Positions 3,389 through 23,700 of a stretch of DNA of 64,000 bases are shown piece after piece. Position numbers and translations under genes: made by a program. The DNA comes from Fimbriosthenelais zetlandica (lineage: Eukaryota). Numbering within the stretch: position 1 is the first letter of the stretch; each line of letters opens with the position of its first letter. The notes under the pieces were generated by a model that saw only the letters and a program-made list of their open reading frames with translations, was not told where the DNA came from and did no database searches. The DNA is taken from the NCBI GenBank assembly GCA_977030845.1, contig OZ365109.1, forward strand, positions 56,234,001 through 56,298,000. The letters are read 5' to 3'.

Positions 3389-3656
3389 TTGAATCTCCTA
3401 CAAGTTGGGCTAGTCTCCTACAGGTTGGTTCTGGTCTTTGCCAATTGGCGGTAGCTGCTTGTTAGAGAGACCTCGCGCAACTTGGGTCCAGTATCCTGCA
3501 GATCGGGTCTGGTCTCCTGGAGTTTAGAGTGTTTTCCTGCACTGCAGGCTGGGTCCAGTATCCGGCAGGTTGGGTCCCTGGTCTATAGTCTCATGGAGCT
3601 TAAATCTGGTCTGGTCTCCTCAAGATCTGATCCAAGTAGTCTCCTACATTTTGGGC
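3389..3656 (+). repeat. Degenerate 21-bp minisatellite (consensus about CAGATTGGGTCCAGTCTCCAG)
   Basis: Units include gggtccagtatcctgcagatc, gggtctggtctcctggagttt and gggtccagtatccggcaggtt. Same family as 24283-24387. Confidence 0.7.
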
Positions 3657-5258
3657 CACATTTTGTGACCACCATGTTCAAGAACAAAGCCTAAAAAATC
3701 GCCGCATATTTTTTAAAAGTAAATCTTTCTGTACATGAATTTTTAACGGAACTTTCAGGTCCCTTAGTCTATAGCTCTTGTGGCTCATCATGTGCAGAAA
3801 AATTCTTGTCAACAGAAATCCTGACAGCTGACTCCAACCCACGCTCCTAAAACCATCACAATTTATTGCTGCATTAAGGGAGGCACATTTTTCTTGCTCA
3901 AAACCACAACCTCTTGTCTTTAACAAAGAACATTGGTGGAATAACTCTCACATAAAAAAGAATCACTCATCACATGCATGTGAATAAGTGACGGTGGTCA
4001 GAGAACAGCGATATAGTGAAGTGGGAGAGAAGAGGAGGGCACTTCAATCACTTCCTGAAAAAACGTTTCGGGCTTGAATTTATGAGAAAATGGACCGATT
4101 TTTACTGTAGAAAGGAGGAGTAACTTTTTGAGAGTAGGCTACAACTTGCCCCAACGAACTGGAACTTTATTTCCCAAAAGCCAATTTCTTTAAACGTTTA
4201 CAATATACTATATATTAATTAATAGTAAATAAACTGAATGAGTGAGTACAACCTACCCAGGACTATGTTATTGAAGGATTATTTATAAACATATATTTTT
4301 TTTTCAGACATGGAAAAGAAAAAGAAGACTTCATATAAGAGTTAGGAATGGAGTGCCCCTGTTATCTTTCCCCCAGGTGTCTGTCTTGAAGCTAGTGCTA
4401 ACCCATTATGCAGTCAGCTTTCCATTATTACTTCCAGAATGAGAAGTTAACTTCTCGTTCTGGAAGAACTATAGTCTACCAGATCCCAGGTCTCTCCCTT
4501 GCAAGAACCTTGAGACCGCCTTTTGGCTAGCCTTACCGTGAACTCAACCGAGGTCCCTAGCTTTACAGTCGGTAGGTGTTTGATACCTTTCTCGTTACAA
4601 AACAGGCAAAATTCGCAAGACTTTTGACGGTTGGTCAGCGAGGGGAGGTCCGTCCAGCCAAATCAGCTCCTTTGCTTCTTGCATTTTTGAGGTGTTTTCT
4701 GTAAGCGAGTCTAAAGTCGCACAGGGCCATTCGATGCTATTGGCCTGAAAGCACTGTGTACAAGCCACTTATATCTCACCTTTACGACTTTAAACTCATT
4801 TAATGAAAACGGGTGACATATTGTTGGATGGAGGCTAGCAAACTTCATCATTGATCACTACATTAGTTTTAGCGCTTGGGCAAGTATACAAGCATACATG
4901 TGCTACAATGAAACACATTTCATTTCCATCACTATCTAAAATTTCTAACAGGGGACTCACCATCTCCATCCTTTTCCTCCTGCTTCCAATCATTCCTATA
5001 ATAATCTCCTCTTTGAATTCTCTCATGCCCTTCTCTGAGTTCTCCCAGTCACCCTGTCTTACTTAGCCACTCTCCCATTCACTATACCACCCTCACCCTC
5101 CCTTATACTTTCTCCTATACCATCTCTCCCATCCCCCATGTTCTCCACTGTCTCTTATATTCTCCCGAGCACACCATTTCCCTTTCCTCCAGCCATCTCT
5201 CCCCTCTGTCCTTAACCCTGTGTCTCATCCCCTCCGAACCTCATCATCTCCTTTCTAA

Positions 5259-5450
5259 TTGGGGTATGTTTCATAAAATATTTTCAATAATTTACTAATT
5301 TCTCGCATACCCTTATTTGGGGCAATTTTCATAAAATATTTCAGAATATTATCTGTCACCCTTTTGGGGACATTCTATCTACAACTATCACTTGCACCAT
5401 CACCATATCTCTTTCTGTGTTTGGGGCATGTTTCATAAAAATATTTCCAT
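5259..5450 (+). repeat. Degenerate internal tandem repeat of the 2.2-kb element (4 units, spacing 47-58 bp)
   Basis: Units begin TTGGGG at 5259, 5317, 5364 and 5421. Three continue as TTGGGG(T/C)A(T/A)(G/T)TTTCATAAAA(A)TATTT. Mirrored in copy 2 near 21165-21355. Confidence 0.7.
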
Positions 5451-5854
5451 ACCTACATACCCGCCCCCACCACACAGACACTCACCTCAGTAATTTCCAA
5501 TACCCATCACCCTATTCGTAGCGTTATTAAATATTTCTACCACTATTTCCCATCTGTCATCTTACACCCTCCAAACAAAATTTAAGTTTAAAATATAAAG
5601 AAATTTTTTTTTTTGGTGAGTTAGTCTTAGTCAACCGGATCCATTCACCCTGGCATATCAACCCTGGCAAGGCTACACACTTGATAACCAACTGATCACT
5701 GTGGCGAATCGCTCCATGGCCGTACACACATATGATCAGTGCAAGTGTTCCACCTCTACGGATTGAACGCGGGCCCACACAAATCATGCTATGATCAGAT
5801 CGTGGGGGACTTCACCAGTCTTTCACTTGAAACTTACAGACGGGACCACTACCA

Positions 5855-5943
5855 TGGCTGTTGTGGGGGTTCGAACCCACGAGTCTGTTAAAACTTACAT
5901 CAGACTACCAGCGCCCTTGACCACTGGGCCAACGAGAACAGCC
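5855..5943 (-). ncRNA. tRNA-Leu-like Pol III cassette, counterpart inside copy 1
   Basis: Reverse complement of 20671-20759 with a few substitutions. The acceptor stem, A box and B box (GGTTCGAACCC) are retained. Confidence 0.65.
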
Positions 5944-6142
5944 ATTAGAGGTAGTAAACCAAATGGTAATATTTCCAGAACCTCCCCAACCGCGGAGGTT
6001 GATTATTCTACTGACCAGACACATTAAGCTGATACATTCGGTAGTTTTTAAAAGTTTTAAATTATGAATTGATATTAAATATATTTTCCTTTTCACCGTC
6101 GCTTCTCATGTACCACAATTTGTTGAACACCAACAGATCCAA

Positions 6143-6217
6143 GCAGTCAGTGGCCGAATGGTTAAAGAGATGAACTCTCAATACGAGGGGCATGTCAAAC
6201 TAGCTTCGAGTCCTGCC
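6143..6217 (+). pseudogene. tRNA-Ser-derived cassette with downstream T-tract (counterpart 20397-20471, minus)
   Basis: GCAGTCAGTGGCCGAATGGTTAAAGAGATGAACT...GGGG...AGCTTCGAGTCCTGCC aligns by eye with animal tRNA-Ser (GTAGTCGTGGCCGAGTGGTTAAGGCGATGGACT...CAGGTTCGAATCCTGCC). The 3' acceptor strand is lost. T4 is at 6228-6231 and T7 at 6235-6241. Confidence 0.55.
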
Positions 6218-7200
6218 ATGTTCCGCGTTTTCGCTTTTTTTCCAACTGCTTATTTATTCTAACTCCCTTACTTGTATATTGTAAGGTGCCATTTAGAGTA
6301 GTACAAGAACATGGGTTCGAATCCCAACAAGGTCATAATTTTTCTCTTTCAAACCAAATCCCCTCTTCTAACTCCCAAGCACGTTTTTTCACCTAAAGTG
6401 AGCCCCAGACCAACATCTAATTCAGGTAATATATTTCGAGAGAAAAAACCTATGTCCTTACGTTTAGGCCTACTATGTTCATCTAGGTTAAAATCTCCTA
6501 TCAACATGATTTTGCTCATTAGTAAATAATTCATCTCCTCCATTAAACTATATATTCATAAGACTATAAAGTTATTCTGGAAGTGTTTGATGGGCCACAT
6601 CATCGGCCTTGTTTGTACATCAGTCTCGTTGACTTTATAGCGTGAAGTGTCAGAGCAGGTGACGATCCGTTGGGATTCCATGCCACTGACATGTTAACAC
6701 CGTAAAAAATGGCACCGCCGAGAGGATATCTGAAATAATTATGTGGGGCGGGTCCCCAGCAAGGCAGAGCCAAGGTCCCAGTTCACAAGGGCAATCCATT
6801 TATGGCGAACAAGCTCGCCAATAAGTGTAACGCCCCCAAGAAAGACACGGATGGAAAAGTGCAAATCTTGTTATCGGAGTGGGCTTTGTGCAGAGGGCTT
6901 TTGGTGAGGACTTTTTAGGGGGAGGAGGGAAATGGAAGATGCGTTATTAAAATTATTGGAGTTTTTCTGGTGATAAATATTGTGGGTAGGTGTGGTGATT
7001 GGAAGGATGTTGTCATATGATCGATCATTTCCGGGTGTAAATCACAAGCTCCCCTCACTAAAAGGTGATCTGTTCTGACCAAGCTGACCCTGGGTACTAC
7101 TTCTAGTGGCAGCATTTTCTATTCATTTATAATTCAATCTTTTATCTCCCTCTTAGATTACTTGTTATGTAGAGAGAGGTATGATCTCTTAATATTTTAA

Positions 7201-7413
7201 AGCGGCTCTATCACCTATCAACCTTTCATTGTAAGCTATACAGAATCAGTTCATCTTTGTTCCACTGCTGATTTTGGCAGCACCTTGCAATGTGAAGTGA
7301 ACTAAGCTGTAGGCATTACTCCCTGATCCTCAAACCAAATCAGGAACTAGGTCTAACTGATATAAGATTTTACTTTGGTGGGACGTTCTTCACAGAAGGG
7401 TGATAGAGTAGCT
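7201..7413. mobile_element. 213-bp MITE with TTAA TSD and AG...CT termini (Kolobok-like)
   Basis: TTAA|AGCGGCTCTATCACC (7197-7215) ... GGTGATAGAGTAGCT|TTAA (7399-7417). The 15-bp TIR has 2 mismatches and is flanked by a TTAA duplication. Confidence 0.7.
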
Positions 7414-9099
7414 TTAAATGAATGCTTTTGTAGAGGGTCAGTTCATGTAAATATACTATAGAGATTGTGGCAAGTCCAAGCGATCTAAAACGATGGACAC
7501 AAACCATGAATATATATTACCTTAGGGTATACTCAGCATATTGCGAGGATCTATAGTAAAATACACTGGATATATACGGTGGATATATTTTCAAATCATA
7601 TCAGTTGCTCCAGCATTATACCTCATCCGTTTATGGAGCATAAAATGTGAGCCACTCCAAAATATTAGAGTAGATCATTATGTACTCTTCTCTAAGGTTT
7701 CTATCAACTAATTACTTTACCTTTTCTTATTATAGGACCGAGTATAAAACCATTAGATAGCGATGCTTACCTTATTAAAAGGCAGACATGTACCCATAAA
7801 CAACTACGTGTATAAAAAATATAGGCTATAATATTAGACGTATACCAAACCAAGCTGTATAAATATGTTGAATAAAAAATAGGCCTATAGCCTATTATAA
7901 TAGGTAATTTTTATCAAATTACAAAACGCACACAAAAGAAATCTATTCACTGCAGGGAATACATGAAACCCGAGTTTTAATAAGAGTTCCCCAAGAACTT
8001 TTTCAAGCAGTAGTCCCTAAATTGGAATGGAAACAGGCCAATGGAAGCGACCACCAGCCTCCTTTCTTGATCCCTTCCTCCCTCCCATACCTAGACCCCT
8101 GAACCTGACCTTGACCCTTGGCCGTCACCATGGTTATGACCTTTATGTTAGTACATCAAGGCAACACCGGAAGTCCCGCCCATTCCATGCTTCCCTGTGC
8201 AAGCTCCCGACTTTCAGAGTCTACAGTTATTGGTGGGCATACAACATACGCTTTTCAATATCATATTGAGCTTATAAATGCCCTAATTATATACGGGCAT
8301 ACAGAATATTCTAGAATATAGGTATAGGTCTATTGCTATTTAGATTCTGTTTAGGCTGCTGGGACAATACATACAATACATGTAGGGAGCTGGGAGCAAA
8401 ATGTATCAACCCACATTGCTCATGAATTGGTTTATTGGGAAAATGTAAAATATAGTAGCCGGTACCGAGTCGTATCAGTGAAGTTCCGATCATTCTGATC
8501 AAGGAGTTCAACAATCAAAAGATGCTGAATAAGCATAGACTAATGATGCTAGTTTAGGCACATTCACTCTGAAAATACTTTTAGACAAGGCTTGCACTTT
8601 CAATTAGAGCTGTGTGATCAGTGTAATCAGCAAGACATATTATGTGTCATTATATTAGACTCAGATAGCACAGAGAGATAAAATAAATTCAGTCATCTCT
8701 CTACTTGCGAGTCTGCCATTCCTATGCATAGGCTATGAGGTAAGACAACTATGATGTAATGTTCATACCCAAGAGACTTGGATACCTGAAGGACATTAGT
8801 CATAACCTACAGGGGCCTGCACCCAATTTACAAGGGACGGAATACAATCTATAGGAGGCTGGGCCCAGTCTACAAGAGACAAATCAAGAGGCAAAAGAGC
8901 CTACAGTATCCTCTAGGAATATTCAATTGTCAACTGTGTCAATTGTCATCCAGTTTCACAAAACATGCAAATCTCTATGAAACATTAAAAGACAGTGTCA
9001 ATAATTAAAATCTCCAAAGTTAAGAGGTAGTGAACATTACAGAATACATTTGGACGTGTATTGATATTGATTATGTATAAATATTGATTGAGGACTTAC

Positions 9100-9205
9100 C
9101 GTGAGTTTTGGGGACCCACACTATTTGTATCGTAAGATGATGAAGCTGTGATGGCCCTGTCTGGAATCTTCCCGGAGTGCATGCCCAGCGACTCCCGGCA
9201 GTGTG
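9100..9205 (-). CDS. DDR: Internal coding exon of a discoidin domain receptor (DDR1/2-like receptor tyrosine kinase); start of the discoidin/F5-8 type C domain
   Basis: The minus strand reads tttcttcattttctctgacag|CA CAC TGC CGG GAG TCG CTG GGC ATG ... GTG GGT CCC CAA AAC TCA CG|gtaag. It has a polypyrimidine tract, AG acceptor (9206-9207) and GTAAG donor (9099-9095). Translation is HCRESLGMHSGKIPDRAITASSSYDTNSVGPQNS(R), matching the C..LGM..G.IPD..ITASS motif that opens discoidin domains. The phase-1/phase-2 boundaries and SVGPQ.xR tail fit DDR as I recall it. The neighbouring coding exons were not found in the window. Confidence 0.85.
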
Positions 9206-12200
9206 CTGTCAGAGAAAATGAAGAAATAGCTATGATTAATAACCCGAGTATAACTCGATTAGTTAGAGCTTCACTTCACTTGTTATTGACACTCATACAT
9301 TAAGCAACTCACGTCCGTCATTCCAGTCATTCGCACTACCAACCAATCACATTAAAACCAAGTAGGAATCCATGGTAACCCTGGGCAGGCCTGAGAGGTC
9401 GAGGAATCTGCACCCATCTACAGACCTTGATCCTCTTCACAGATCAATCATAATTTTTCAACTAATTCTTTTAACACTTTTGAGATATTCCTCTGACAAG
9501 TGACAGATCTATATCTCTTGCTTACACAATATACCTTAGATTATTTCTTGAATAAAATAATATTTTCTTGCATCGTTATTTTCTTGAAGTGATTTTCAAC
9601 AAGTAAAGGCTTTTAGTTAATGTCTGAAGCGCTATATATGTCATCAACTCTGTGTTTCAGTAAATAAGCATTAAACCTCTAACATGGTTTGGGAAAAGAT
9701 AAAACAACAAAATATGCCTATAAATAAAGTAACAATTATGTCATCTAAAAACCTAAGTCTCTCTAAGCCTATAACATATTTCTATTTCTAAATTAAGATG
9801 GGGTGTGGAACACTCCAGTGAATAAATTGGCACTTCACATCGGAAGCGTTAGAATCCAATCACATTTGGGGTTTGAGGGGGAGAGGCTTCTCAAGCAGCC
9901 CATATTTTAGTAGAACCCAGATGATCCACGCACTGCACTATGGGAAGATGGACCGGAAATATTGACCCCGTCACCAAGGTAATGACCTTGTGGGCAGGCC
10001 AAGGTCAGATGAGCGCCCCGGAAGAACAGGCTCGCCTTTGAGCGTTTGCTTTCCAAGTGATATCCCTTTACGCTTACGATACCATATCAATGCTCGGGCC
10101 AAGTGCACCCAAAGGTTGTTTCTACAATGCAGAAAGAATTCAAATTTCACTGGATATTTGTTCACAGATGGTTAACTTGAATGTCTGTGACCCGGAGTCT
10201 GAAGTGAAGACACAGATTTTTAATCTGTGGAGGAGAGGTCATTAATACTTTTCAATTAGGCCTACATGTATTTTATTAATAGGCCTAGTGAAATATTGTC
10301 TTTAACGTTTCTTTCGTTAGATTCACGAGATACCATCAGAACGATTCTGATATTTCTTTTTCATTGAGCCTAATTTAAAAAGAAATGAACGAGTGAAATT
10401 TAAAACTTAAATATTTTGATGGACGTTTCGCTGAGGCTGAAAAATCAGAAGCAAAGAACAGCAAGTCTCTTCCTAATTTAGGACCAGCTTATTACTAAGT
10501 TTCATGGAAATTGAGATTTTCATGCCTTTCAGTGATATCTATGGTGAATAACTGATTTTCTGAGGGGATCTCTTCATTAAGTATCATGAAGATAATCTAG
10601 TTACAGCATCGATTAGGTGAGAGCTGAGTGGAATTATCAGTCTCTGAGGTCACCAGGTTGTGGCAGATGGTCAGGATTAGCAGTTTTTTCAGACCAAAAG
10701 ACATTAGATTGAACAGCGATGACTAACCAAGGCCAATATCCTTCATCTTGAAAGGGTCAGGATCCAGAAAAAATCACTTATAATTGAGCACTTGCCATGT
10801 TTCCGAACCTACTGACCAAATGGACAGCGTTTAGTTTTCTATAGGGGGATGAGATGAGGGCCTCTTTATTCAGTTACACCCCCTCCCTCCCTCTGAAACA
10901 TTTTCATCACATAATTATGCGAAATTGTAAACTTTTTGGTGACATTGAATCCATCATTTTAATGGGCAATCTTAAGAAAGTGTGATCATAATTGCCTTCT
11001 GAGGAAAGTCAAGGATCGAGCACGAAATTAATATTTGGACCCAACAAATCTTATCTGGTGGAATCAGATTCATTTTCTATATTTTATAATGAATTTTTGG
11101 TCTTTAAATGCACAGTATTTATAAGTATACATTTACACACAGAAACCATGAAGTAAATGTACCACACTTGAATCATAATGTCAAATTCACTCACGAAGTG
11201 TATATATCAGTTGGACATGGGTATAATGCCCAACTTGATGTTAGCCACTTAACCGTTTCATGCAGCTCATTATGACTCTTTTACGACTCAATGATGCATT
11301 AGAGATCCGAGATCCAAGCAAACTCCAGCTGTCAGCCCTCTGCCCCCTCTCACGCCTTCCATCCACTCCCTCGCCTCTCCACTCCTTTCAAACTCAGTAA
11401 TGGAATCCCTCAGGACACCAAAACAAATCCAAAAAATTTAATTCGTTTTTTTCACCGTTCCCTCACAGGATTTATCCAGGACTTCAAGTGCACTTAGCTC
11501 ACATTATATATGGCCAAGAGTCGGACAAAATATCTCTTTATAAGTTTTGTCCAGGAGACAATGGGTCGTGTTGGGGGAAATACACATAGAGAAGAGGGTG
11601 TCAGTCATCACCCCCTTCACTGCCCACTTGTGTTATTTCAGTAAGTGAGATACCTGTTGGCATCCCTTGAATACAAGCAACGATTGTGGGAGAAAAATGC
11701 CCTGCGAAAGGCCGGGCCATTTGACAGATTCCAAAAGGGAAAATCCTTTTTATGTCGGATCAACTTTGTCGCCATGGAAACCCGATGTGATGAACTAAAT
11801 CCCTGTGTATAGGTCAGTTCTAAAGGCAAGTTTGGAAAATTCAAACACGAGTAAACTTGTGCTGCATCTGTTTATGTATATGAGACTGGGTTTATTTAAG
11901 GTAGGTAGGAAATCCAAGAAATTTTGCCTTTTAATATAGGCTCAGCACGGTTAAAATATGTAAATATAAATAATCTAATACTAGCCATAAGGGAAATGAT
12001 GCGCATCCTTTTTAGATAATTCTTCTTTCTAATTTCACGATGACAACTCAACTGCATGGTACACAATTGTTAAAAATAGGAAGGTAATAGCCTTTGCCAG
12101 TAGGTTTCCCCCATCGTTGGCCTTCGTTTAGTTAAAGGACTTTGTTTGGTATAATTTAACTGTGCCCTATAATTGCTTTTCCCCAAACAAGGTCTTGGAC

Positions 12201-13639
12201 AATTCCCTGTTAAAATATGCCAGGTTGTTGACAGGATCTACATGACTGGTTCATTCAGTAACAATGGACTCACTTACACAGTGTGACAGGGGACATGTTC
12301 CAGGCAATGTGCATCCCAGTCGGGTTCCATTTGTCTCTTCTCCCCAGGTACCAATTGACAAGTTTTCTGTGAAACATTTCTCTGAAAAACGGGTCACCTT
12401 TGTTGAATTGTCTTTTCATGCATTGACATTGTGCATGAATGTTTCAGAACTTCCTTTAAATGATTAAGAAATTGAGCTTTCTAGAGGTCATAAATATTCT
12501 TAACAATGTAAGACAAAGACAACTTTGAAATCAATAAAAATTTTCACTGAAATCGTTCCCTTCCCTAAGGGCTTGGACATCAGAATGACCTTCTGAAATG
12601 CAAATTAGTACTTATAGGACGGATCAGATGGCTGGACAGCCTTGCCAGTCAGTATAGCCTACGGGTAAAATTAGTTCTCAAGGTTTGCTAATGTCTGGAA
12701 GGCACCCCGAAGCGACCTCCAAATGATAAGGTAAAAAGTGGCATGTGTGTAAGGGAACCCAATGGGTTCATCCCCAACTATCTACGTCTGTTCCCTGAAG
12801 GGCAATGTTGTCCATTGATAAGAAGACTTGTTTACTTCAGCCCAGGTGTGGACAGATAACTTACCGGTCAAGTGGTCAAGTAGCCAGTCATATAACCTGG
12901 CACTGACCTCAGGCATCTGTCCACTCCTGTCCTTGACCCCTATGTTGGAAGGTTTCTGGTCGATTTCCTAAGTCTCAGATTGCATTGGCGGGGAGTACTT
13001 TCAAGTGGGAATAGAATAGTAATTAATACCCAGAATCAATTATGATCAAGCTGATAGGCCTTACCTAGGTAGCTCTCGGTTGGTTGACTGGGACAAAAGG
13101 CTGGGCAATTGGATACTTGTGGATACGCCTAGCGGCCCGCCATGGCATGCATGGTTCAATGCATGTTTCATACGGGTGTTCTCTTTGGCTGGGCATTGTG
13201 TTTCAAGACAGAAAACATGGTAAAGGTTTGTGTGTTGTCTTCCTCAAAGGGAATAATGGTTGAATGAACAATGTATTTACCCTCAGTCCATCCTCAAAGA
13301 AATGAAGATATTACTACCGTATTCAGAAGTTATTTGCTCTGATTTTGATCAAGGGGTATTATATCCAGAACTTCTTCTGAACTTCGCTCAAGTCTTTTCC
13401 AAGGAATATATTCATGTACTCACAAAGAAGGCCGCTATAGTCGACAAACTCGTCAAGCTTTATAGAGATTTTTCTCGAAATAGTCTAAATAAGAATGCTG
13501 TGAGGTTATAGGCCTAATGAATATTTATTCGACAATTTCTATCTTGCGTCTCTCTTCATATTTCCATTTGACGTTTAATCTATTTTAGTCTGTCTGTCTA
13601 TCACGTTGTTTGCCCTGTCTGGTTTCCATTCTTTACCCC

Positions 13640-14040
13640 CATGTCCATCTCTCTCTAATCATTTTTCCACCTTTCACCTTATTCCTGTTAACATCACCCG
13701 ACCCCCCCTGTGGACCGCAGCCTCCAGCATATCCCCGCTACCAAGCCTGACCTCCCTGACATATCCAGAGAGATCAAAAAGGGCAAGCGGTCACTCATTC
13801 CTCCCTCATCTCCCTCCCACAATCACCACGGCTGTCAGCCCGCCCCGCACTATCCATGTCACTTAACTCTCTATTGTCAATCTACGAGTTGCTCGCATCA
13901 GCTCGCCATCTGCTCTCTGTCACCGTTCAACCCTTTCACGCCTCCCCCGCCCCCCTCCGACTGCCAGAGGCAATGCCTCAAGGCCAGTTTGATCCCATGT
14001 ATTATTCAGAAGAGCATTGCATTCGCCCAGACCAATGTTT
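13640..14040 (+). mobile_element. Decayed L2-like RT fragment
   Basis: DISREIKKGKRSLI, then LLSIYELLASARHLLSVTV...ASPAPLRLPEAMPQG (cf. WF.SYL..R...V.V....S.P....GVPQG), with frameshifts. Confidence 0.33.
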
Positions 14041-14764
14041 AATGCTGATTTTTTCCGGTGATAAATATTAGCTTTCTGCCATGGTCGGACGGCTGGGATG
14101 GACACGGCTTTCTCCTGGGCACACAAATATATTCAGTTGGAATCAAAGGGTCGGATGTGATATAGAGATGATCTGATTTCATTTCCCAATTTTCTATTTA
14201 GCTTTGCCCTTTCCCCACAAACTATACAGTGGCCACTGTATATCTCTAAGAAAAGTGGAATACATTTTTTATTATGCATTTTGCGGATATATTGAAGTTT
14301 TACAAACTCCATCAAACTCTATGATTTATAAGATATAAGTTAGAAGCATAAAAATCCTCGTCCTTCTGATAAACTTCACCGATCAATTCCATTGAAACTA
14401 AAATTACTTTGCAGAAACTTGATCAAAAACTTAATCATAGGGTCCAATGTTAAGAATATCTAAATTAAACTAGGAAGAGATCGGAATTAAAGGTTTAGAA
14501 TGGGCGACACCCAATGAGTGTGATATGCGAGCAGGGGATATAGCTGACCTTTAATTCACAAGTCCATGCACCCCAGGCAATGAATTCGATCCCTGCTCAG
14601 AAGGAGAAGATCATAACAATGATTTTGGACATTTTTACCCCCAGGCTGCATTAGCACAAAGGGAAAGGGGCAGTGGGGCCTTTATAAGGTCAATAACCCT
14701 TGACATGGTCAGGCCAAGAATTTTGAGTTGGCTTTTAGTAGGTTCATACAGAGAGGACTGTCTT

Positions 14765-14960
14765 CTGTAGCATGCAGATTGGGTGCAGTCTTCTACACAG
14801 TCTCGACTGAGTTCTGTTCCCAGCAGATCATGTGTCGCGAATACAGAGTCCGACAGATTGGGACCAACCTCATGCAGATTTCGGTCGTTTAATGCACAAT
14901 GTGCCAGATTTTGTCCTGAAGGTTTGGTTCATGCAGTCTCCCGCATACTGGTCCAGTCTC
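14765..14960 (+). repeat. Highly decayed member of the 21-bp minisatellite family
   Basis: Recurring gcagattgggtgcagtct, cagattgggaccaacctcatgcagattt and tggtccagtctc. Confidence 0.45.
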
Positions 14961-15483
14961 TTACTGAATTATCATATCCAATGTCTGCAATACTTTTTAA
15001 TGACATGCTCCAGTCCCCTTATTAAAGACTCAGTCTTTACGTTGTTATTAGTAAAATTCATTTGTTCAGGAATTTCTAGCTCACCTACTCGACAGAAAAA
15101 TGTTGAAAATGAAAGTTAATTTATTCTTGATTTGGTGGGGGGAAACGAGAGAGAAAGTGATGTAAATTACATCTCCCAGGGGGATGAATAATGGATATAT
15201 CATTCATTGTCACCCATTCTTTTTCAACAAGCAGCAATCTGTCTTTTAGAATCAGCTGGAAAAGGATCAAGGAGAAATTCCCCCAGTTCTACTGCATGGA
15301 GCTGCTTATCAATCATATTGATTCATTGGCTTTCTTTCGGCAATACATTTTCTTTTGTTTCTGACTTTGTTTTATTAATGGCTTTCTTCATCAGTTGCTG
15401 TACAAACTGTTGCAGTTCTTACTACATGCATTGTTTAACAATGTATCCACAGTTTATTTGGAAATAAAATTAGATGAATAAAA

Positions 15484-15521
15484 TAGATGAATAATCTACA
15501 CATAGATGAATAATCTACACA
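15484..15521 (+). repeat. Perfect 19-bp tandem duplication
   Basis: tagatgaataatctacaca occurs twice, preceded by a partial tagatgaataa at 15471. Confidence 0.9.
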
Positions 15522-16483
15522 TGAAAAATGTATATCTCTTTAAAATAATTTTAGAATCATTATTACAAACTAAGATCCGGTCGATAGGCCTATATTTGCA
15601 TTTTCCCCAATCAATCCAATGTAAAATGGAAGTATCTGTTTTTCAGTGTATGGTATTTGGTCATATAACACAACAAACTTGTTTTTAAATAGCTAGCAGA
15701 AAGGAAACTCCGCTATTTTCAAAGCCTCACCCCTGGGGACACTGATGGGGATTTCACAAGTGCTAAATTCTGCTGCTTGTTAAATCTCTGACGGCTGTTT
15801 CACCTGTTTGTCTACAAAATCCTCAAAAACAATCAAGGCAAAAACATCCATCACCCTGCCCCTAAGGCGATCAGGACTCAGTTCAAACGACAAACAAGTC
15901 CTACCTCACTCACCGCCCTTCACAATCACTAATCATCTCATTCCAAAGTACTTTTGGTTCCTATCACCTCTCAAAGCCTTCGGGCATATAAAACAACACC
16001 CGAACTGTAACCATTTGACTGATTTTGAGTTGTGTTCTGGTGGTTAAAGCACAAAATGGCTGGAGAATGAGGTGATTTGATTGAGCATGCAGTCCTGAAT
16101 GGAAGACATGCATGGTATTGTTTGATGTGGTAAATTACCGAAAGAAATTGGTGTAGGACTTGTTTTGGTTAATTTATGAAAATACCATGTAGATAGTTAA
16201 CAAATGCGGTTAATGTTTAATCCTAGTCTAATAAGGATACAATAAAATGGTCGACGTTTTTGATAAGAAACTAAGGTGATTGGATATGACGGTCAGTTGA
16301 CACCTTCCATGCGATATTCATCAGTCTTGACAACCTTGAATATTCGGCAGTTTCAAATGTTTCAAATGAAGGGAAACACTTTAGTTGTATTGGGTTCCTG
16401 GCATTCCACCACTTGGTGGTCTTGGTTTGGGTCGTACAAGCTGACAACAGGCCTGTGATAACTCACTCAACACAGACGAGACA

Positions 16484-16700
16484 CTAGTAGCTGGGAGGGT
16501 GGGGCAGGGCGGGGGGAGATGGGTGAATAGAGAAGATACAGACAGAGGGAGTGTGAGAGAGGAATAAGGAGATAAAGAGAGAGAAAGGGGGAGAGTCAGA
16601 TAGGAGAGTGAGTGGGGAGACAGGATAGATGGTGGCGAGAGAGGAGAGACGGGGGGTGAGAGTGGAGAGGGAGGGAGGGAGACTGAGGGAGAGAGATCCA
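16484..16700 (+). repeat. Purine-rich (GA) low-complexity tract
   Basis: Degenerate GGAGA/GAGA tract. Similar tracts occur at 18190-18385, 35570-35700, 55200-55375 and 62260-62530, and on the other strand at 36750-36970, 40480-40650, 47790-47975 and 56230-56460. Confidence 0.85.
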
Positions 16701-19700
16701 GGTGTGATACTATCCATGGTAAGTCCCACCCCACATTTGTCTTTCACACTCAACACAGACTTCACACTTCAAAACTTTCCCCAGACCGCTCCTCACTCAA
16801 ACAAGGTTAGAGGCAATGTCAATTTAATTATCTTTTTATAGCAAGAAAGAGATAACCTTGGAAACTTCCTACCAAGGGCACAAAGGGTACAAACCTACCA
16901 TATGTTTTAGACAGAGGCAGACAAATATTCGGTAACAAAATAAATAACCAACAATTGTGATTTTACATTTTTTTAAAGTACAAATTTACAAATCTTACCT
17001 TGATCTGTTTGTAGGACGGTGAATGGACATCACATGAAAGAAAGAAAAAAGGACATTAGAATATTTTCTCAAGATAAGGGTAACCGTTAACAATCCCCAC
17101 TTTCCTAAACTACTCATAAAAACTCTCCATGCTTTAGAAGGACTATTGAAGGACTTTTTATAGGGTCATGTTAACATGTTTTAATTCCATAGGCGGACCT
17201 TAATAATATAGGGCCATGGAAGGATATTAAGGGTATATGTATGTAGACCCATGTAAGGACTTAAGTGTGAGTATTTCCTATTTAAAGACGCCTCCTCCTA
17301 CATATTCCCCCAACCATTGAGTGTATGTATATTGAGTGTGATTAATGCAGTCGCAGGTCGGTAGAGGGCTTGTGGTTGGATCCCTCTAAACTTCACCTCC
17401 GCTCCTAACATCCCACCAGACCTGTCCTACACCAGGGCACGCTCCCCAGGGCAATGGTAAACATCTCCCGGGTCTACGGGAGGAAAGCAATGCAAACAAT
17501 TACCAATGCCAATCACTATATAGGTGCTCCCCAGCCCGCCAACTACCATTCAATGTCAGGCTTTTTATACGCTTTTGATAGCATTTCAAGCTGGTTGATA
17601 AAAGAATTTTCAAATGTTTTTGTTATTTATTGTCTGTATTTCCAAAACTGTGTTAGCATCTTAGCAAATATTAACATCCAGTAGCTAAGAAAAAATTAAC
17701 ATCCACTAGCTATGATTCCGGTTTTGCAGGCATTTGTGTGAAAATTGGAAGCAAAAATGAATCAAATATCCCATTGCACATTGGCAAAATGTACACATGC
17801 TGCATGTCTTTTACAGCTGTTGGTAATTACCAACAAAAGCATGATTTAAATACATTATTCTAACGGCTGTACTGTCTGTATAGATCAATATTGAATAGAA
17901 AATTGTACATTTCGCCAATAAAGGGCAGTGGGGATTGAATAATTCTGTGGTGGATTAAAGATCTGTTGACGCACATGGGGAAATCACAGATTGACGTGGA
18001 GAGTCTATTACTTATGGGAGGGAGAGAGGGAGAGTGAAGTGCGAAGGAAATCTCTGAGCATCAGGTGGGAGAGTGAAAGGGTAAATTTACAGAGTGTCAG
18101 TAGTGTGTCATGAGGGAGGGTTGGGTCGGGTAAAACAATATGATGACTGACCCAACATGACTCAGGCCCGCGTGGTGGAGCAATTAGAGATGCTTACCTT
18201 CCTTTATATGGTTGGGGTGGGGGATGGGAGGTGGTGGTAGGGAATTAGGGAAGGGTGGCGAAGGGAAGGGTGATTCGGCAGGCATGGGGTGGTGTAGGGG
18301 ATGTGAGGGTTGGAGGAAAGCAGGGAGGGGGTGGATAGTATGGGGATGACTGTGTTGAAGGGTGTAGGGGAGAGGGTGAGGGATCACAAGGTAACTGCTC
18401 CCCCTATACTAAAGGTATAAATATACTTAAAACCCTAATTCTATACCCATTAACAAATAACTGGGGATGGTGCGGATTTATCATCTGAGTACCCAAATCC
18501 AGTAACCTTGGCAACCCTAAGAGGGGTTATGGGATAATGTAGGGGGGGGGGGTGCAGAGCCAAATGAACGACATTAGTTGGCAGAATGCAAAGTGCAAAG
18601 TGGGGGCGTGCATGCAAGGATGTGCTCTGAGCAGGAGCTCGCACATCTGAGGATAATTGGTTTGTTTTGATTGGGATCTTCGTGCACCATCACAAAAGGT
18701 TTAATCTTTTAAAGTGCCCGCTACCTGAGGGTGGTAGGATCGTCCGGATTAGTAGTTAATTAACTGGATATGACCAGATGCTTCATCTAATGAAAGACAC
18801 TCACGAAATGTAAGGGAAAAGATCGGCGTGTTTTATGTGTAAGAACAATGGTAGTTTACACAATGGTATCATCCCACAGAATAAAATACTTCATATTAGG
18901 CATACAGTACATATTTCATATACCCTTTCATTCCTGTACCTTAGGCAGTATTTGTAAACTATTCAAATCATTCAATGTGCATGGAAAATGTCTACATAAA
19001 TTCTGTTTGTGTAATATGGATACCACAAACAACTGCAAAATCTACATTTTTCCAATAAGCCTAATGCTCAATGGGGTTACATAATACTGCATCCAACTCC
19101 AAATGGATTCAAAATTCAATTTAGAAAATGAACACCCTGGGTGGTAGACGGGAATATGGTAATTATTGAAAGTAAATCATCAACAATGTTCGTGTATAAG
19201 TTTCCGTCAGAAGATACAGACATGAAACCATTGTGATGGGTAACTAAATGGTGGATCTAAATCAAGGGAACTCACAATGGTTTGAAAGAAGACGCCAAGA
19301 TGGATGACATAATCCCTATCTTCAGCCAAAACTCCTAAATCAAACTTCATCATTTGCTCTCGTTACAACATCTAATTCAAGGCTGAGAGGAGAGGTAACA
19401 CATTGTAATATATCCCAGGGATGTGAGATGTGAGTAGGGGGTGAAGGAGGCCTGCTTTTATACCAGATAGGCAAGGCTATAATCTCCGCCTCAAGGACCA
19501 CCCCAGGGGCACCTGAGTGTGGAAGAAAATGGTAGGGGCGGATGGATACAACAGTACTTCGGCCCGTCCTCCTCCGCTAATGACAAGGTATGAGAAAAAA
19601 TGGTACAGAGCAAAAGAGTCCCTTTAATTCAGTAACCGACCATGGGAATGCATTCATGCGAGGAGTCTCTATGGAGCAAATATACCCCCAGGTAATACCA

Positions 19701-20231
19701 CCGAGGAAATCCAAGAAAAAATGACATAAAATATCAATATTGCACAGAAAAAATACCGTTAAGTAGTGATTAGGAAATATCATTTGTGAGCGTACCCTGG
19801 ATTGGGTTCCCTTTGGCTTAGAAAAACATTGCAACACAAAAAGTTTTTTCTGTAGACTTGAGTTTCCGATTTCCGGTGTTGATAGGGTGGGATTTTTGTC
19901 CGTGCGAGAAGGCTATTATCAAAGCATTGGAAGTTACCAGCCCCGCTTCTCAGAAACCAAACAAGGCCGATGATGTGGCCCATCAAACACTTCCAGAATA
20001 ACTTTATAGTCTTATGAATATATAGTTTAATGGAGGAGATGAATTATTAACTAATGAGCAAAATCATGTTGATAGGAGATTTTAACCTAGATGAACATAG
20101 TAAACGTAAGGACATAGGTTTTTTCTCTCGAAATACATTACCTGAATTAGATGTTGGTCTGGGGCTCACTTTAGGTGAAAAAACGTGCTTGGGAGTTCGA
20201 AGAGGGGATTTGGTTTGAAAGAGAAAAATCA

Positions 20232-20305
20232 TGACCTTGGTGGGATTCGAACCCATGTTCTTGTACTACTCTAAATGGCACCTTAACCATTTAGGCCACC
20301 GAATC
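20232..20305 (-). pseudogene. tRNA-Leu(UAG)-derived cassette with T5 terminator (5'-truncated counterpart at 6282-6335)
   Basis: The reverse complement is GATTCGG TGGCCTAAATGGTTAAGG TGCC ATTTAG AGTAGTACAAGAAC ATGGG TTCGAAT CCCAC CAAGGTC A tga TTTTT. It has an A box, perfect B box, an ATTTAG loop as in tRNA-Leu(TAG), a partly paired acceptor and a TATA-like tttatata upstream. In copy 1, 50 nt including the A box are replaced by 3 nt. Confidence 0.55.
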
Positions 20306-20670
20306 TGCTATAAGAACACGGGTGTATATAAACGTTATACAAGTAAGGGAGTTAGAATAAATAAGCAGTTGGAAAAAAAGCGAAAACGCGGAACATGGCA
20401 GGAATCGAAGCTAGTTTGACATGCCCCTCGTATTGAGAGTTCATCTCTTTAACCATTCGGCCACTGACTGCTTGGATCTGTTGGTGTTCAACAAATTGTG
20501 GTACATGAGAAGCGACGGTGAAAAGGAAAATACATTTAATATCAATTCACAATTTAAAACTTTTAAAAACTACCGAATGTATCAGCTGAATGTGTCTGGT
20601 CAGTAGAATAATCAACCTCCGTGGTTGGGGAGGTTCTGGAAATATTACCATTTGGTTTACTACCTCTAAC

Positions 20671-20759
20671 GGCTGTTCTCGTTGGCCCAGTGGTCAAGGT
20701 CGCTGGTAGTCTGATGTAAGTTTTAACAGACTCGTGGGTTCGAATCCCCACAACAGCCA
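20671..20759 (+). ncRNA. tRNA-Leu-like Pol III cassette, probable SINE head (body runs to an A-tract near 21000-21010), inside copy 2
   Basis: GGCTGTT ctcgt TGGCCCAGTGGTCAAGG tcgctggt AGTCTG-13 nt-CAGACT c GTGGG TTCGAAT CCCCAC AACAGCC A. It has a perfect 7-bp acceptor stem, A box, B box and a 6-bp central stem. Extra bases after the acceptor and an oversized central loop mean it is not a canonical tRNA. Confidence 0.65.
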
Positions 20760-23700
20760 TGGTAGTGGTCCCGTCTGTAAGTTTCAAGTGAAAGACTGGT
20801 GAAGTCTCCCACGTTCTGATCATAGCTTGATTTGCGTGGGCCCGCGTTCAATCCGTAGAGGTGGAACACTTGCACTGATCATATGTGTGTACGGCCATGG
20901 AGCGATTCGCCACAGTGATCAGTTGGTTATCAAGTGTGTAGCCTTGCCAGGGTTGACATGCCAGGGTGAATGGATCCGGTTGACTAAGACTAACTCACCA
21001 AAAAAAAAATTTATTTATATTTTAAACTTAAATTTTGTTTGGAGGGTGTAAGATGACAGATGGGAAATAGTGGTAGAAATATTTAATAACGCTACGAATA
21101 GGGTGATGGGTATTGGAAATTACTGAGGTGAGTGTGTGTGTGGTGGGGGCAGGTATGTAGGTATGGAAATATTTTTATGAAACATGCCCCAAACACAGAA
21201 AGAGATATGGTGATGGTGCAAGTGATAGTTGTAGTTAAAATGTCCCCAAAAGGGTGACAGATAATATTCTGAAATATTTTATGAAAATTGCCCCAAATAA
21301 GAGTATGCGAGAAATTAGTAAATTATTGAAAATATTTTATGAAACAAACCCCAATTAGAAAGGAGATGATGAGGTCCGGAGGGGATGAGACACAGGGTTA
21401 GGGACAGAGGGGAGAGATGGCTGGAGGAAAGGGAAATGGTGTGCTCGGGAGAATATAAGAGACAGTGGAGAACATGGGGGATGGGAGAGATGGTATAGGA
21501 GAAGGTATAAGGGAGGGTGAGGGTGGTATAGTGAATGGGACAGTGGCTAAGTAAGACAGGGTGACTGGGAGAACTCAGAGAAGGGCATGAGAGAATTCAA
21601 AGAGGAGATTATTATAGGAATGATTGGAAGCAGGAGGAAAAGGATGGGGATGGTGAGTAACCCTGTTAGAAATTTTACATAGTGATGGAAATGAAATGTG
21701 TTTAATTGTAGCACATGCTTGTACTTGCCCAAGCACTAAAACTAATGTAGTGATCAATGATGAAGTTTGCTAGCCTCCATCCAACAATATGTCACCCGTT
21801 TTCATTAAATGAGTTTAAAGTCGTAAAGGTGAGATATAAGTGGCTTGTACACAGTACTTTCAGGCCAATAGCATCGAATGGCCCTGTGCGACTTTAGACT
21901 CGCTTACAGAAAACACCTCAAAAATGCAAGAAGCAAAGGAGCTGATTTGGCTGGACGGACCTCCCCTCGCTGACCAACCGTCAAAAGCCTTGCGAATTTT
22001 ACCTGTTTTGTAACGAGAAAGGTATCAAACACCTACCGACTGTAAAGCTAGGGACCTCGGTTGAGTTCCCGGTTAAAGGCGGTCTCAAGGTTCTTGCAAG
22101 GGAGAGACCTGGGATCTGGTAGACTATAGTTCTTCCAGAACGAGAAGTTAACTTCTCATTCTGGAAGTAATAATTACTGAACTATAGAAAGGGGTAGAAT
22201 CAAAGGGAGATCTAAAGTCAAATCTTTAAAGCTGCACCAGAATCTGACGTTATCAAAGCATGCCTCATGACTTCAACCATGCTAAATAGGAATCCGGACA
22301 AAAATCATTTCCTCATTCATTTTCTCAAATTTCAATCATCTTAATTAAAGTCCTAACCCTTTAATTTAAGTATTTTCAAATCCGAAGTATAATCCAGATC
22401 AAATAAAGGCCTATTTGAATAATATGTTTTTGTGTTGGTGTAATCATGAACAGGTGCAAAATTTGACATTTTGCCGATAAGCATAAATTGTTGTAGGGAT
22501 TGGGGAATTTTGGCACCAACTGCAATCAAATTATCGCTCTGCATCGCTTGGGCAAATCGCCTCAGTGTGGGCCCGGCATAAGGGAAAAAAGCTTTAATTA
22601 GGTGTATTTGAGGGGATTGTGCAGGCAGCACGAGTAGTATCGACCACCTAGTATGAAACTAATTAAATTCCTCTACCTGAGAATTCTCAGAAATCCTCAC
22701 CTAATTCTGACTGAATCAAAGACCTTCAGTAAGATAAGGAAACCAAGTCATTTACAGTAGAATGACCAGGGAATTAGATTTGACGGATGGACTTTGTTTC
22801 GCAGGTCGCCTTTGATCTTTTTGGATGATGGTGGATGTTCACACAGGTGTGAGGATCTGATTAAGCTCACCCTCCTGCCTGTTCCCTCACACCTATACAA
22901 GATCCGAGCTGGGTTTGATCATTTTCAGACTCTGCCCTTTGGTACTGGCCCAAAAACTGATTGGTGAACTTGGCCTCGAGAAGGACTGCACCAAAGATGC
23001 ACCAGAACTGCCCTTAGAATGCCTCAGCTTCCTTCAAATTCAAAGCACAACAATCCAGCTTTAACATAGCTGAAATTAAATTGGTTTTTGTGGCCAAAAG
23101 ATCATTTTATTAATTGTAACTTTGGCTGGATCAACCAGCCCTGACTTTGAAAAGACACTTGACATTATTGCTTCCAAAAAATCAATCTTGTCTCAAACTG
23201 AGCTTTCAAATCAATCTTTTTATCAAAAGGTTTGAAATTCAAAGAACAATGGCAAAAATCTTGACCATTGGTTGATGATTGTCTTTTGGAAGACAGCTGC
23301 TGAAAATACGTCATTTCTTATTTAATGTTGGATATATTTGGATGTCTGTGGTTGGCTTAATGGGATTTCCAGCAGAGCCTGACATTTCAGCCATTGATCC
23401 GAGCAGTCTCAGGGAATTTCAATGGCCATTAATCGAAGGAATGCTCCACCTTGAATGACCTGATAAAGGCGTGAAGTTTCACACACCCACATTTGGATCA
23501 GCCTATTACACAAGATCAATGGTTAACATTTCCCAAATGAAAGCAAGTAAGTTAACCGTGACCATTTACATTATACTCTACAGCCCCTGTTTGCCTTTGA
23601 TGATTCAATATATTAAATTCAATGGGAGGCATACCAAACAGATGGTATTTGTATTTGAATCCAATCCTTCAGATCGGAAACCTAAAAACATCATTAGTAC

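What the first reader, a model, noticed from the sequence alone, without database searches (positions are those of the whole stretch)
4424..6615. Rolling-circle (Helentron/HINE-type) element of 2.2 kb with complete terminal architecture
Seen in sequence: both copies start ATTATT plus a 36-bp palindrome (CTTCCAGAATGAGAAGTT|AACTTCTCGTTCTGGAAG). They carry an 11-bp subterminal inverted repeat near the far end, then a GGCC-loop-GGCC hairpin, and end CTTGTTT. They contain central degenerate tandem repeats and have no TSD. Established knowledge: this asymmetric layout (5' subTIR with its own inverted copy, 3' subTIR, 3' stem-loop, T-rich ends, no TSD) defines Helentrons/Helitron2 and their non-autonomous DINE-1/HINE derivatives. 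Inference: this is a recently active non-autonomous family, unusually long because of captured cargo. One discrepancy is that the reconstructed empty sites are not clean TT targets.
Basis: partly seen in the sequence, partly recalled or inferred. Interest (0 to 1): 0.7.

Follow-up and report, generated by a model that had tools for sequence, protein, structure and literature searches.

The report
Young non-coding rolling-circle transposon family
This is one copy of a young family of about 350-400 copies of a 2.2-kb non-coding rolling-circle (Helitron2/Helentron-type) transposon that inserts next to the five letters TTATT without duplicating its target; it is an ordinary new member of a known kind, and its protein-coding partner was not found.

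Summary
The window carries two inverted copies, 4425-6613 (+) and 19960-22173 (-). The same genome (447 Mb) holds 336 exact and 374 near-exact 5' ends and 409 near-exact 3' ends. The 30 best-matching copies are 97.5-100% alike pairwise (median 99.6%).

Two independent empty sites and four head-to-tail junctions show that the mobile unit is ACTTCC...CTTGTT (4430-6613, 2184 bp). The TTATT before it is pre-existing target. Nothing is duplicated.

The layout fits the published Helitron2/Helentron design:
- an 11-nt inverted repeat exactly at the 5' end, forming a strong hairpin;
- its partner 29 nt from the 3' end;
- a conserved but thermodynamically weak GGCC hairpin;
- a T-rich target and no target-site duplication.

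The genome encodes intact Helentron proteins (Rep, Pif1 helicase, endonuclease). No coding element with these ends was found, and the one Helentron I examined is surrounded by a different family. Whether the interior is captured cargo was not tested, and the central repeats are three loose direct repeats, not a tandem array.

Verdict: a real, recently active, non-autonomous Helitron2/Helentron-type family, and a new member of a known kind. The same scan had already noted related families in this genome.

The parts
4425..4429 (+). TTATT target pentanucleotide at the 5' side of copy A (host sequence, not part of the mobile unit)
   Evidence: Empty sites keep exactly one TTATT. Head-to-tail junctions read CTTGTT|ACTTCC with no TTATT between. 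Of 26 independent copies, 25 have TTATT and 1 has TTGTT.
4430..6613 (+). Mobile unit, copy A (2184 bp, A-type subfamily), non-coding
   Evidence: This is the filled-minus-empty difference. It is 100% identical over its length to many other copies.
4430..4440 (+). 5' asymmetric terminal inverted repeat, ACTTCCAGAAT
   Evidence: It lies 0 nt from the unit's 5' end.
4431..4466 (+). 5' hairpin (18+18 nt palindrome made by the 5' repeat and its downstream inverted copy)
   Evidence: The fold is -14.7 kcal/mol, z = -6.6.
5259..5451 (+). Three loose 31-nt direct repeats (TTGGGG.ATGTTTCATAAAATATTT...)
   Evidence: They are not tandem by Tandem Repeats Finder.
5855..6335 (.). tRNA-like relics (T-arm-like GGTTCGAA motifs at 5861-5879 and 6312-6330, in inverted orientation)
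Evidence: inverted pair I3. ARAGORN finds no tRNA. In copy B, the matching parts of this region score 22.9-27.5 bits, below the Rfam thresholds.
6574..6584 (+). 3' asymmetric inverted repeat, ATTCTGGAAGT, 29 nt from the 3' end
6593..6608 (+). Short 3' hairpin, GGCC-8 nt-GGCC
   Evidence: -3.3 kcal/mol, z = -0.8. The 40-mer that contains it occurs 409 times with at most 2 mismatches.
6609..6613 (+). 3' terminal TTGTT
19960..22168 (-). Mobile unit, copy B (2209 bp). It resembles the B-type subfamily at several diagnostic sites, carries its own 10-bp deletion at the subfamily's indel site, and keeps a 47-bp segment that copy A lacks.
22169..22173 (-). TTATT target pentanucleotide of copy B
22158..22168 (-). 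5' terminal inverted repeat of copy B
19989..19999 (-). 3' inverted repeat of copy B (ATTCTGGAAGT on the element strand)

Best explanation
The stretch is a non-autonomous Helitron2/Helentron-type rolling-circle transposon (a HINE). The mobile unit is ACTTCC...CTTGTT, 2184 bp in copy A, and it codes for nothing.

Shown:
- The unit is present in roughly 350-400 copies.
- Every insertion examined lies directly 3' of a TT[A>>G,T]TT pentanucleotide. The cut may equally lie one or two T's inside that pentanucleotide.
- Nothing is duplicated or lost at the target.
- The unit's own 3' end, TTGTT, can itself serve as a target, which gives head-to-tail pairs.

Inferred, by analogy with Helitron/Helraiser, IS91 and IS200/IS605:
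- A Rep (HUH, two-tyrosine) nuclease-helicase supplied in trans nicks one strand after TTATT at the left boundary.
- It unwinds and copies the strand, then cuts again after the terminal TTGTT.
- The 5' hairpin marks the start. Pairing of the 3' repeat with the 5' repeat, together with the small GGCC hairpin, marks the stop.
- The single strand or circle is then pasted after another TTRTT.

The enzyme source is presumed to be one of the intact Rep-helicase(-endonuclease) genes of this genome. It has not been identified.
For: Copy number and ends:
- At least 40 full-length hits at 97-100% identity.
- 374 5' ends with up to 2 mismatches and 336 exact.
- 409 3' ends.
- Identical ends in 30 + 6 copies with unrelated flanks.

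Empty sites:
- Site 1: seven paralogues of a host transposon read TTTAC-TTATT-GAATATC, against filled TTTAC-TTATT[ACTTCC..CTTGTT]GAATATC.
- Site 2: a neighbouring duplicated LINE segment reads CAACCA-TTATT-ATTTATT, against the filled version.

Junctions and target variation:
- Four head-to-tail junctions read CTTGTT|ACTTCC.
- Target variants are 6 TTGTT, 5 TTTTT and 0 TTCTT.

Structure and age:
- The 5' hairpin folds with z = -6.6.
- The 3' repeat lies 29 nt from the end.
- The 30 best-matching copies have median pairwise identity 99.6%.

Possible enzyme source: an intact 3149-aa ORF in the genome carries Helitron_like_N, PIF1 and Exo_endo_phos domains, and the Rep domain gives 30 hits genome-wide.

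Published definitions: PMC3627910 (5' repeat 0-2 bp from the end, 3' repeat about 20-30 bp from the end, 5' hairpin, insertion after TTTT, no duplication) and PMC4067079 (subterminal repeats, T-rich target, no target modification).
Against: - No coding element with these ends was found. Of 336 exact 5' ends, all but 12 carry the family sequence for at least 293 bp, and none of those 12 lies within 50 kb of a Rep hit.
- On contig C1, all paired ends are 2.0-4.6 kb apart, except one 13.4-kb pair with no Rep hit.
- The one Helentron gene examined closely is flanked by an array of a different family with another hairpin.
- The 3' hairpin is no more stable than shuffled sequence.
- There is no direct evidence of movement: no reads from the source organism were available.
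- The mechanism is inferred by analogy, not observed.
Confidence: 0.85

Rival explanations
1. It is a segmental duplication or other non-mobile repeat. The two window copies would then be a local inverted duplication with no transposition behind it.
For: Within the window there are only two copies, and they are inverted. Five copies on contig C30 do share flanks.
Against: There are hundreds of copies on many contigs, with unrelated flanks and the same ends to the base. The five C30 copies are one insertion carried inside another transposon, and that transposon has many empty paralogues.
Confidence: 0.01
2. It is a cut-and-paste (DDE transposase) miniature element, with the inverted 11-mers acting as terminal inverted repeats.
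For: An inverted 11-mer sits near both ends. HINE-like elements have been misannotated as MITEs in the past (PMC4067079).
Against: The repeats are asymmetric: 0 nt from one end and 29 nt from the other. There is no duplication at two independent empty/filled pairs. Head-to-tail junctions are exact. Variants whose 3' terminus is lost run on into further sequence, which is typical of rolling-circle elements.
Confidence: 0.03
3. It is a tRNA-derived SINE-like retroposon, because the interior holds tRNA-like pieces.
For: There are T-arm-like motifs, and sub-threshold tRNA matches in copy B.
Against: It has no poly(A) or simple-repeat tail and no duplication. The tRNA-like parts are internal and lie in both orientations. 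The 5' end is a hairpin, not a tRNA. ARAGORN finds no tRNA.
Confidence: 0.02
4. It is a rolling-circle element moved by a canonical Helitron (Helitron1) or proto-Helentron enzyme, not a Helentron. Read in the register TTA^TT, the insertion lies between A and T, as for Helitrons.
For: The sequence allows three cut registers, one of them A^T. Rep-helicase ORFs with no detectable endonuclease domain exist in the genome. Proto-Helentrons with 5'-TT ends and A^T insertion are described in PMC4067079.
Against: The ends are not 5'-TC...CTRR-3'. A 5' hairpin and asymmetric inverted repeats are absent from Helitron1 (PMC3627910). The targets TTGTT and TTTTT have no A at that position.
Confidence: 0.08

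Closest known systems
Helitron2 non-autonomous elements (for example Helitron-1N1_CRe of Chlamydomonas; Bao and Jurka 2013, PMC3627910)
   Same: The 5' inverted repeat lies at the very end and forms a 5' hairpin. [quoted passage not shown] Insertion is directly after a T-rich oligonucleotide (TTTT there, TTATT here). There is no target-site duplication.
   Different: The target here is a pentanucleotide with a central A (rarely G or T). The sequence, host and length (2.2 kb against about 0.66 kb) differ. The partner is unknown.
HINEs / DINE-1 and Cg_HINE, non-autonomous Helentrons (Thomas et al. 2014, PMC4067079; Vojvoda Zeljko et al. 2020, PMC7492417)
   Same: Both have 11-13-nt subterminal inverted repeats, an inverted copy just inside the 5' repeat, a 3' palindrome, T's at both boundaries, no target modification, high copy number, internal repeats and tandem or composite derivatives.
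   Different: There is no microsatellite and no real tandem array in the centre, only three loose repeats and tRNA-like relics. The DINE-1 core was not tested. No Helentron with the same ends was found, whereas HINEs are defined together with their partner.
IS200/IS605 (IS608) and IS91 bacterial single-strand and rolling-circle elements
   Same: Insertion occurs 3' of a short specific oligonucleotide that stays outside the element. The ends are hairpins. Nothing is duplicated. The motif at the element's own 3' end resembles the target motif.
   Different: Those are bacterial elements with other enzymes (Y1 or Y2 HUH without a helicase fusion). The resemblance is in how they work, not in membership.
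Canonical Helitron (Helitron1)
   Same: Rolling-circle logic, a 3' subterminal hairpin, no duplication, and loss of the 3' terminus followed by run-on into further sequence.
   Different: The ends are not 5'-TC...CTRR-3', a 5' hairpin is present, and the target is not a plain A^T.

Membership tests
Helitron2 / Helentron-type terminal architecture (PMC3627910) | 5' inverted repeat 0-2 bp from the 5' end | tested here: met
   ACTTCCAGAAT begins at the first base of the unit as defined by empty sites and junctions.
Helitron2 / Helentron-type terminal architecture (PMC3627910) | 5' hairpin formed by the 5' repeat with downstream bases | tested here: met
   A 16-bp stem at -14.7 kcal/mol, z = -6.6; no shuffle of 200 folds as well.
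Helitron2 / Helentron-type terminal architecture (PMC3627910) | 3' inverted repeat about 20-30 bp from the 3' end | tested here: met
   ATTCTGGAAGT at 6574-6584, 29 nt before the end at 6613.
Helitron2 / Helentron-type terminal architecture (PMC3627910) | Hairpin between the 3' repeat and the 3' end | tested here: inconclusive
   GGCC-8 nt-GGCC folds at only -3.3 kcal/mol, z = -0.8. The sequence is nevertheless kept in 409 ends and in a related family, L060.
Helitron2 / Helentron-type terminal architecture (PMC3627910) | Insertion at a T-rich oligonucleotide, without target-site duplication | tested here: met
   Two independent empty/filled pairs. Of 26 independent copies, 25 follow TTATT. Variants are TTGTT and TTTTT.
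HINE, non-autonomous Helentron (PMC4067079) | Shares its subterminal repeats and 3' end with an element that encodes Rep-helicase-endonuclease | tested here: not met
   No Rep hit lies near any listed family end. The Helentron ORF at C30:1898214-1907661 has no such end within 13 kb upstream or 7 kb downstream.
HINE, non-autonomous Helentron (PMC4067079) | Helentron proteins present in the same genome | tested here: met
   An uninterrupted 3149-aa ORF carries DUF6570, Helitron_like_N, PIF1 and Exo_endo_phos.
HINE, non-autonomous Helentron (PMC4067079) | No coding capacity | tested here: met
   No ORF of 90 aa or more lies inside either copy.
DINE-1 (Drosophila) | Conserved DINE-1 core sequence and microsatellite | not tested
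   No DINE-1 reference sequence was at hand. Tandem Repeats Finder reports no microsatellite in the element.
Canonical Helitron (Helitron1) | 5'-TC ... CTRR-3' ends, insertion between A and T, no 5' hairpin | tested here: not met
   The ends are ACTTCC...CTTGTT, or TTAC...CTTG in the shifted register. A strong 5' hairpin is present.

The most novel reading that the evidence does not exclude
The family may be an orphan: a very young family of about 350-400 copies whose terminal repeat (ACTTCCAGAAT) is carried by no coding element in the genome. It would then be moved by a Helentron or Helitron2 enzyme whose own ends differ. In that reading the enzyme recognises little more than the pentanucleotide TTRTT, followed by a hairpin on the left and preceded by one on the right. 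The same motif would serve as left cleavage site, right cleavage site and target, as in IS608. That would make target choice and end recognition of animal Helentrons directly testable with short oligonucleotides.
Probability: 0.2. Interest if true: 0.5.

Novelty: new member of a known kind. Interest (0 to 1): 0.25.

Why it matters
For annotation: this is a clean, well-bounded, high-copy family that should be masked as Helitron2/Helentron-type, and several of its relatives share its ends.

For biology: it gives an unusually sharp picture of the insertion rule in this poorly studied group. The rule is a single TTATT kept at the 5' side, no duplication, and the element's own TTGTT reused as a target. 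It also shows typical by-products: head-to-tail pairs, units that lost their 3' terminus and run on into further sequence, and a copy carried along inside another transposon.

In the window, the two inverted copies lie 13.3 kb apart. Such a pair is a potential substrate for inversion or hairpin formation in the DNA between them.

None of this is surprising to a transposon specialist.

Tried and rejected
1. Search for the autonomous partner:
- The Rep domain (PF14214) gives 30 hits in the genome.
- None of the 12 fetched loci, nor 30 kb around the C30 Helentron gene, holds the family's ends or the 11-mer.
- 'Anchor plus one forbidden base' pattern searches at +50, +260 and +293 from the 5' end and at -100 from the 3' end turned up only indel variants, a B-type subfamily, old copies (L059), a non-coding family that shares the last 85 bp (L060) and composite units. 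One search was a mistyped version of this trick and served only as a count.
- A search for the same terminal repeat with a different hairpin found a point mutant, two other non-coding relatives (L066, L067) and one probable chance hit.
- A copy lying 534 bp from a 2430-aa Rep-helicase ORF on C13 looked like a parent. It proved to be a truncated 'long variant' beside a single-copy gene.
- The ends of the C30 Helentron could not be defined. Its flanks are arrays of another family and nested transposons.

2. Sequencing reads. Only one public run, a marine plankton metagenome, holds two short interior pieces. It gave no empty allele and no expression data.

3. tRNA genes and Rfam families in the element. 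Nothing reaches threshold.

4. Tandem Repeats Finder on the 'central repeats'. It reports nothing.

5. Gene context. ORFs of 90 aa or more around the copies have no Pfam match.

Full report
**What is there.** The window holds two copies of a 2.2-kb sequence in inverted orientation, at 4424-6615 and 19958-22174. Similarity stops abruptly at both ends.
- The 36-nt palindrome is at 4431-4466 (none in 100 shuffles).
- The 11-mer ACTTCCAGAAT is at 4430-4440, with its inverted copy at 6574-6584.
- A GGCC-loop-GGCC motif follows, and then CTTGTT.

As single-stranded DNA the 5' palindrome folds at -14.7 kcal/mol (z = -6.6). The 3' GGCC hairpin is no better than shuffled sequence (-3.3 kcal/mol, z = -0.8). 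The 'central tandem repeats' are three loose 31-nt direct repeats at 5259, 5317 and 5421, which Tandem Repeats Finder does not report.

**It is a large, young family.** The window is C1:56234001-56298000 of a 447-Mb assembly.
- A search with the element returned 40 scored places, 36 of them essentially full-length, at 97-100% identity, on many contigs.
- A 29-nt 5' end pattern occurs 374 times with up to 2 mismatches, and a 26-nt core occurs 336 times exactly.
- A 40-nt 3' end pattern occurs 409 times.
- Controls with the reversed pattern gave zero.
- Thirty fetched copies, the best matches to copy A and so a biased sample, are 97.5-100% identical pairwise (median 99.6%) and 99.4-99.95% identical to their majority-rule consensus. 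Copy B is 98.1%.

There are two main subfamilies. A-type units give end-to-end spans of about 2178-2189 bp. B-type units carry an 11-bp and a 6-bp deletion and span about 2168 bp, or about 2210 bp when a 47-bp tRNA-like segment is kept. About 146 of the 336 exact 5' ends differ from A-type at +260, and the six of these I sampled are all B-type. Copy A is A-type. Copy B resembles B-type at several diagnostic sites but has its own 10-bp deletion at that spot. Pairing the listed ends on contig C1 gives these size classes, plus rarer 2.8-4.6-kb forms and one 13.4-kb pair.

**True ends and target.** Across 30 + 6 copies with unrelated flanks, the constant sequence is TTATTACTTCC...CGGCCTTGTT. Two independent empty sites then show that TTATT is not part of the element.

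*Empty site 1.* Five copies on contig C30 share 141 bp of left flank and more than 1.5 kb of right flank, because one insertion sits inside another transposon that begins CAGGGCTGGATC. Seven paralogues of that transposon lack the insert. They read ...GCATTTAC-TTATT-GAATATC..., and the filled form reads ...GCATTTAC-TTATT[ACTTCC...GGCCTTGTT]GAATATC....

*Empty site 2.* The copy at C21:3949961 lies in a duplicated LINE reverse-transcriptase segment. The neighbouring unit reads ...GTCAACCA-TTATT-ATTTATTTAAG..., and the filled one reads ...GTCAACCA-TTATT[ACTTCC...CTTGTT]ATTTATTTAAG....

In both cases the difference is exactly the unit ACTTCC...CTTGTT (window 4430-6613, 2184 bp), and nothing is duplicated or lost. 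Because TTATT and TTGTT both end in TT, the sequence cannot tell whether the cut lies after the last T, or one or two bases to its left (TTAT^T, TTA^TT).

Other evidence agrees:
- Four head-to-tail junctions in the genome read CATCGGCCTTGTT|ACTTCCAGAATGAG, with no TTATT between. Two of them follow the 3' end of a diverged related family. The element's own TTGTT therefore serves as a target, or read-through joins units.
- Among exact 5' ends, the middle base of the pentanucleotide is G six times, T five times and C never. Of 26 independent sampled copies, 25 have TTATT and one has TTGTT.
- No further flank preference is evident.

**Classification.** With the corrected boundary:
- The 5' inverted repeat is exactly terminal and forms the 5' hairpin.
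- Insertion is next to a T-rich oligonucleotide, with no duplication.

This is the published definition of the Helitron2 group: 5' repeat 0-2 bp from the end, 3' repeat about 20-30 bp from the end, a 5' hairpin, and insertion after TTTT without duplication (PMC3627910). [quoted passage not shown] The element has no ORF of 90 aa or more.

Canonical Helitron ends (5'-TC...CTRR-3') are not present. A cut-and-paste MITE, a SINE and a segmental duplication are each contradicted by the evidence above.

**By-products typical of rolling-circle elements:**
- Head-to-tail pairs.
- A 'long variant' in at least three places (C13:8073204, C10:29538108, C13:39505362). Its 3' terminus is lost after GATGGGCCA, and the unit runs on for about 770 bp into a second partial unit.
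- An older copy at 86-92% identity with a nested insert (L059).
- A non-coding family that shares only the last 85 bp (L060).
- Two further families with the same TTATT plus ACTTCCAGAAT start but other interiors (L066, L067).

**The partner.** The genome has 30 matches to the Helitron Rep domain, many inside uninterrupted frames of 2200-4260 codons.
- The ORF at C30:1898214-1907661 (3149 aa) carries DUF6570, Helitron_like_N, PIF1 helicase and a C-terminal Exo_endo_phos endonuclease. That is the Helentron architecture. It also has an N-terminal region that resembles a cysteine protease by eye, which I did not test.
- Another ORF, at C13:8062425-8069714 (2430 aa), has a Herpes_teg_N protease domain, DUF6570, Rep and PIF1. 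No endonuclease was detected.

I found no coding element with this family's ends:
- The fetched Rep loci and 30 kb around the C30 gene lack them.
- All but 12 of the 336 exact 5' ends carry family sequence for at least 293 bp.
- None of the outliers at either end lies near a Rep hit.
- The DNA upstream of the C30 gene is an array of another very abundant HINE-like family, with the hairpin AATCCCATTTTCCCC...GGGGAAATGGGATT.
- The family copy next to the C13 gene is a truncated long variant beside a single-copy gene, not a parent.

The search was not exhaustive. The partner is therefore unidentified, not shown to be absent. Earlier notes of this scan report 23-24-kb coding parents for other HINE families of this genome (s1-210712, s1-203921). 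I checked only that a Helentron gene with long repeat arrays upstream exists.

**Mechanism.** Shown: precise, duplication-free insertion of a fixed unit next to TTRTT; recent amplification; and reuse of the element's own 3' TTGTT as a target. Inferred from Helitron, IS91 and IS608 biology: a Rep nuclease-helicase supplied in trans nicks after TTATT at the left, peels off or copies one strand, cuts after TTGTT at the right, and joins the strand after another TTRTT. In this model the 5' hairpin and the pairing of the two 11-mers mark start and stop, as proposed for Helitron2 in PMC3627910.

**Other data.**
- No sequencing run of the source organism was available. One marine plankton metagenome holds two short interior pieces at 99-100% identity.
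- The interior has tRNA-like relics. In copy B these score 22.9 bits against the tRNA model and 27.5 bits against tRNA-Sec, both below threshold, and they lie in opposite orientations. ARAGORN finds none.
- Whether any of this is 'captured cargo' was not tested.
- I did not verify the gene context. ORFs around the copies have no Pfam match.

**Verdict.** This is a real, recently active, non-autonomous Helitron2/Helentron-type family, and a new member of a known kind. The added value is the exact unit, the pentanucleotide target rule and the negative partner search.

Noticed in passing
L013:1360-1500 and flanks (C30:1954220-1954360); empty paralogues L044-L050: A host transposon beginning CAGGGCTGGATCTAGG (possibly hAT-like; at least 40 scored matches to its left end, among them the five C30 copies that carry a 2.2-kb unit 141 bp from that end). 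A rolling-circle element is being carried along by a cut-and-paste element.
   Followed up: partly
L058:765-800, 3568-3601, 5315-5348 (C30:1885000-1894999): Arrays of another, very abundant HINE-like family lie upstream of a 3149-aa Helentron ORF. Its hairpin is AATCCCATTTTCCCC...GGGGAAATGGGATT, its unit is about 1.3 kb, and the first look found more than 3000 candidates. This is probably the family that earlier notes of the scan describe.
   Followed up: partly
L069:6926 to L070:4215 (C13:8062425-8069714): An intact 2430-aa ORF with a Herpes_teg_N (deubiquitinase-like protease) domain, DUF6570, Helitron Rep and PIF1 helicase, and no detectable endonuclease. Its nearest relatives in the genome are only about 70% identical at the DNA level.
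   Followed up: partly
window 6465-6472; also C11:23935652: Six-base AGGCCT/TAGGCC differences between copies at TA sites, seen at two different positions of the family. I did not test this.
   Followed up: no
window 20232-20305 (-) and 20671-20758 (+): Sub-threshold tRNA-like matches inside copy B: 22.9 bits to the tRNA model and 27.5 bits to tRNA-Sec. One lies in sense and one in antisense to the element. Copy A lacks 47 bp of the first.
   Followed up: partly
L061:4291-5437 (C30:1909290-1910436): A 1.15-kb terminal-inverted-repeat element (CAGGGTTGG...CCAACCCTG) is nested downstream of the Helentron ORF. It has many copies at 85-97% identity, and one paralogue (C29:15460047) lacks it.
   Followed up: no
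C1:10038959-10052355: A family 5' end and 3' end lie 13.4 kb apart on the same strand, with no Rep-domain hit between them. This is probably a copy with large nested inserts.
   Followed up: no
window 4424-22174: The two near-identical copies are inverted and 13.3 kb apart, a possible substrate for inversion of the DNA between them. I found no Pfam match in the long ORFs there.
   Followed up: partly
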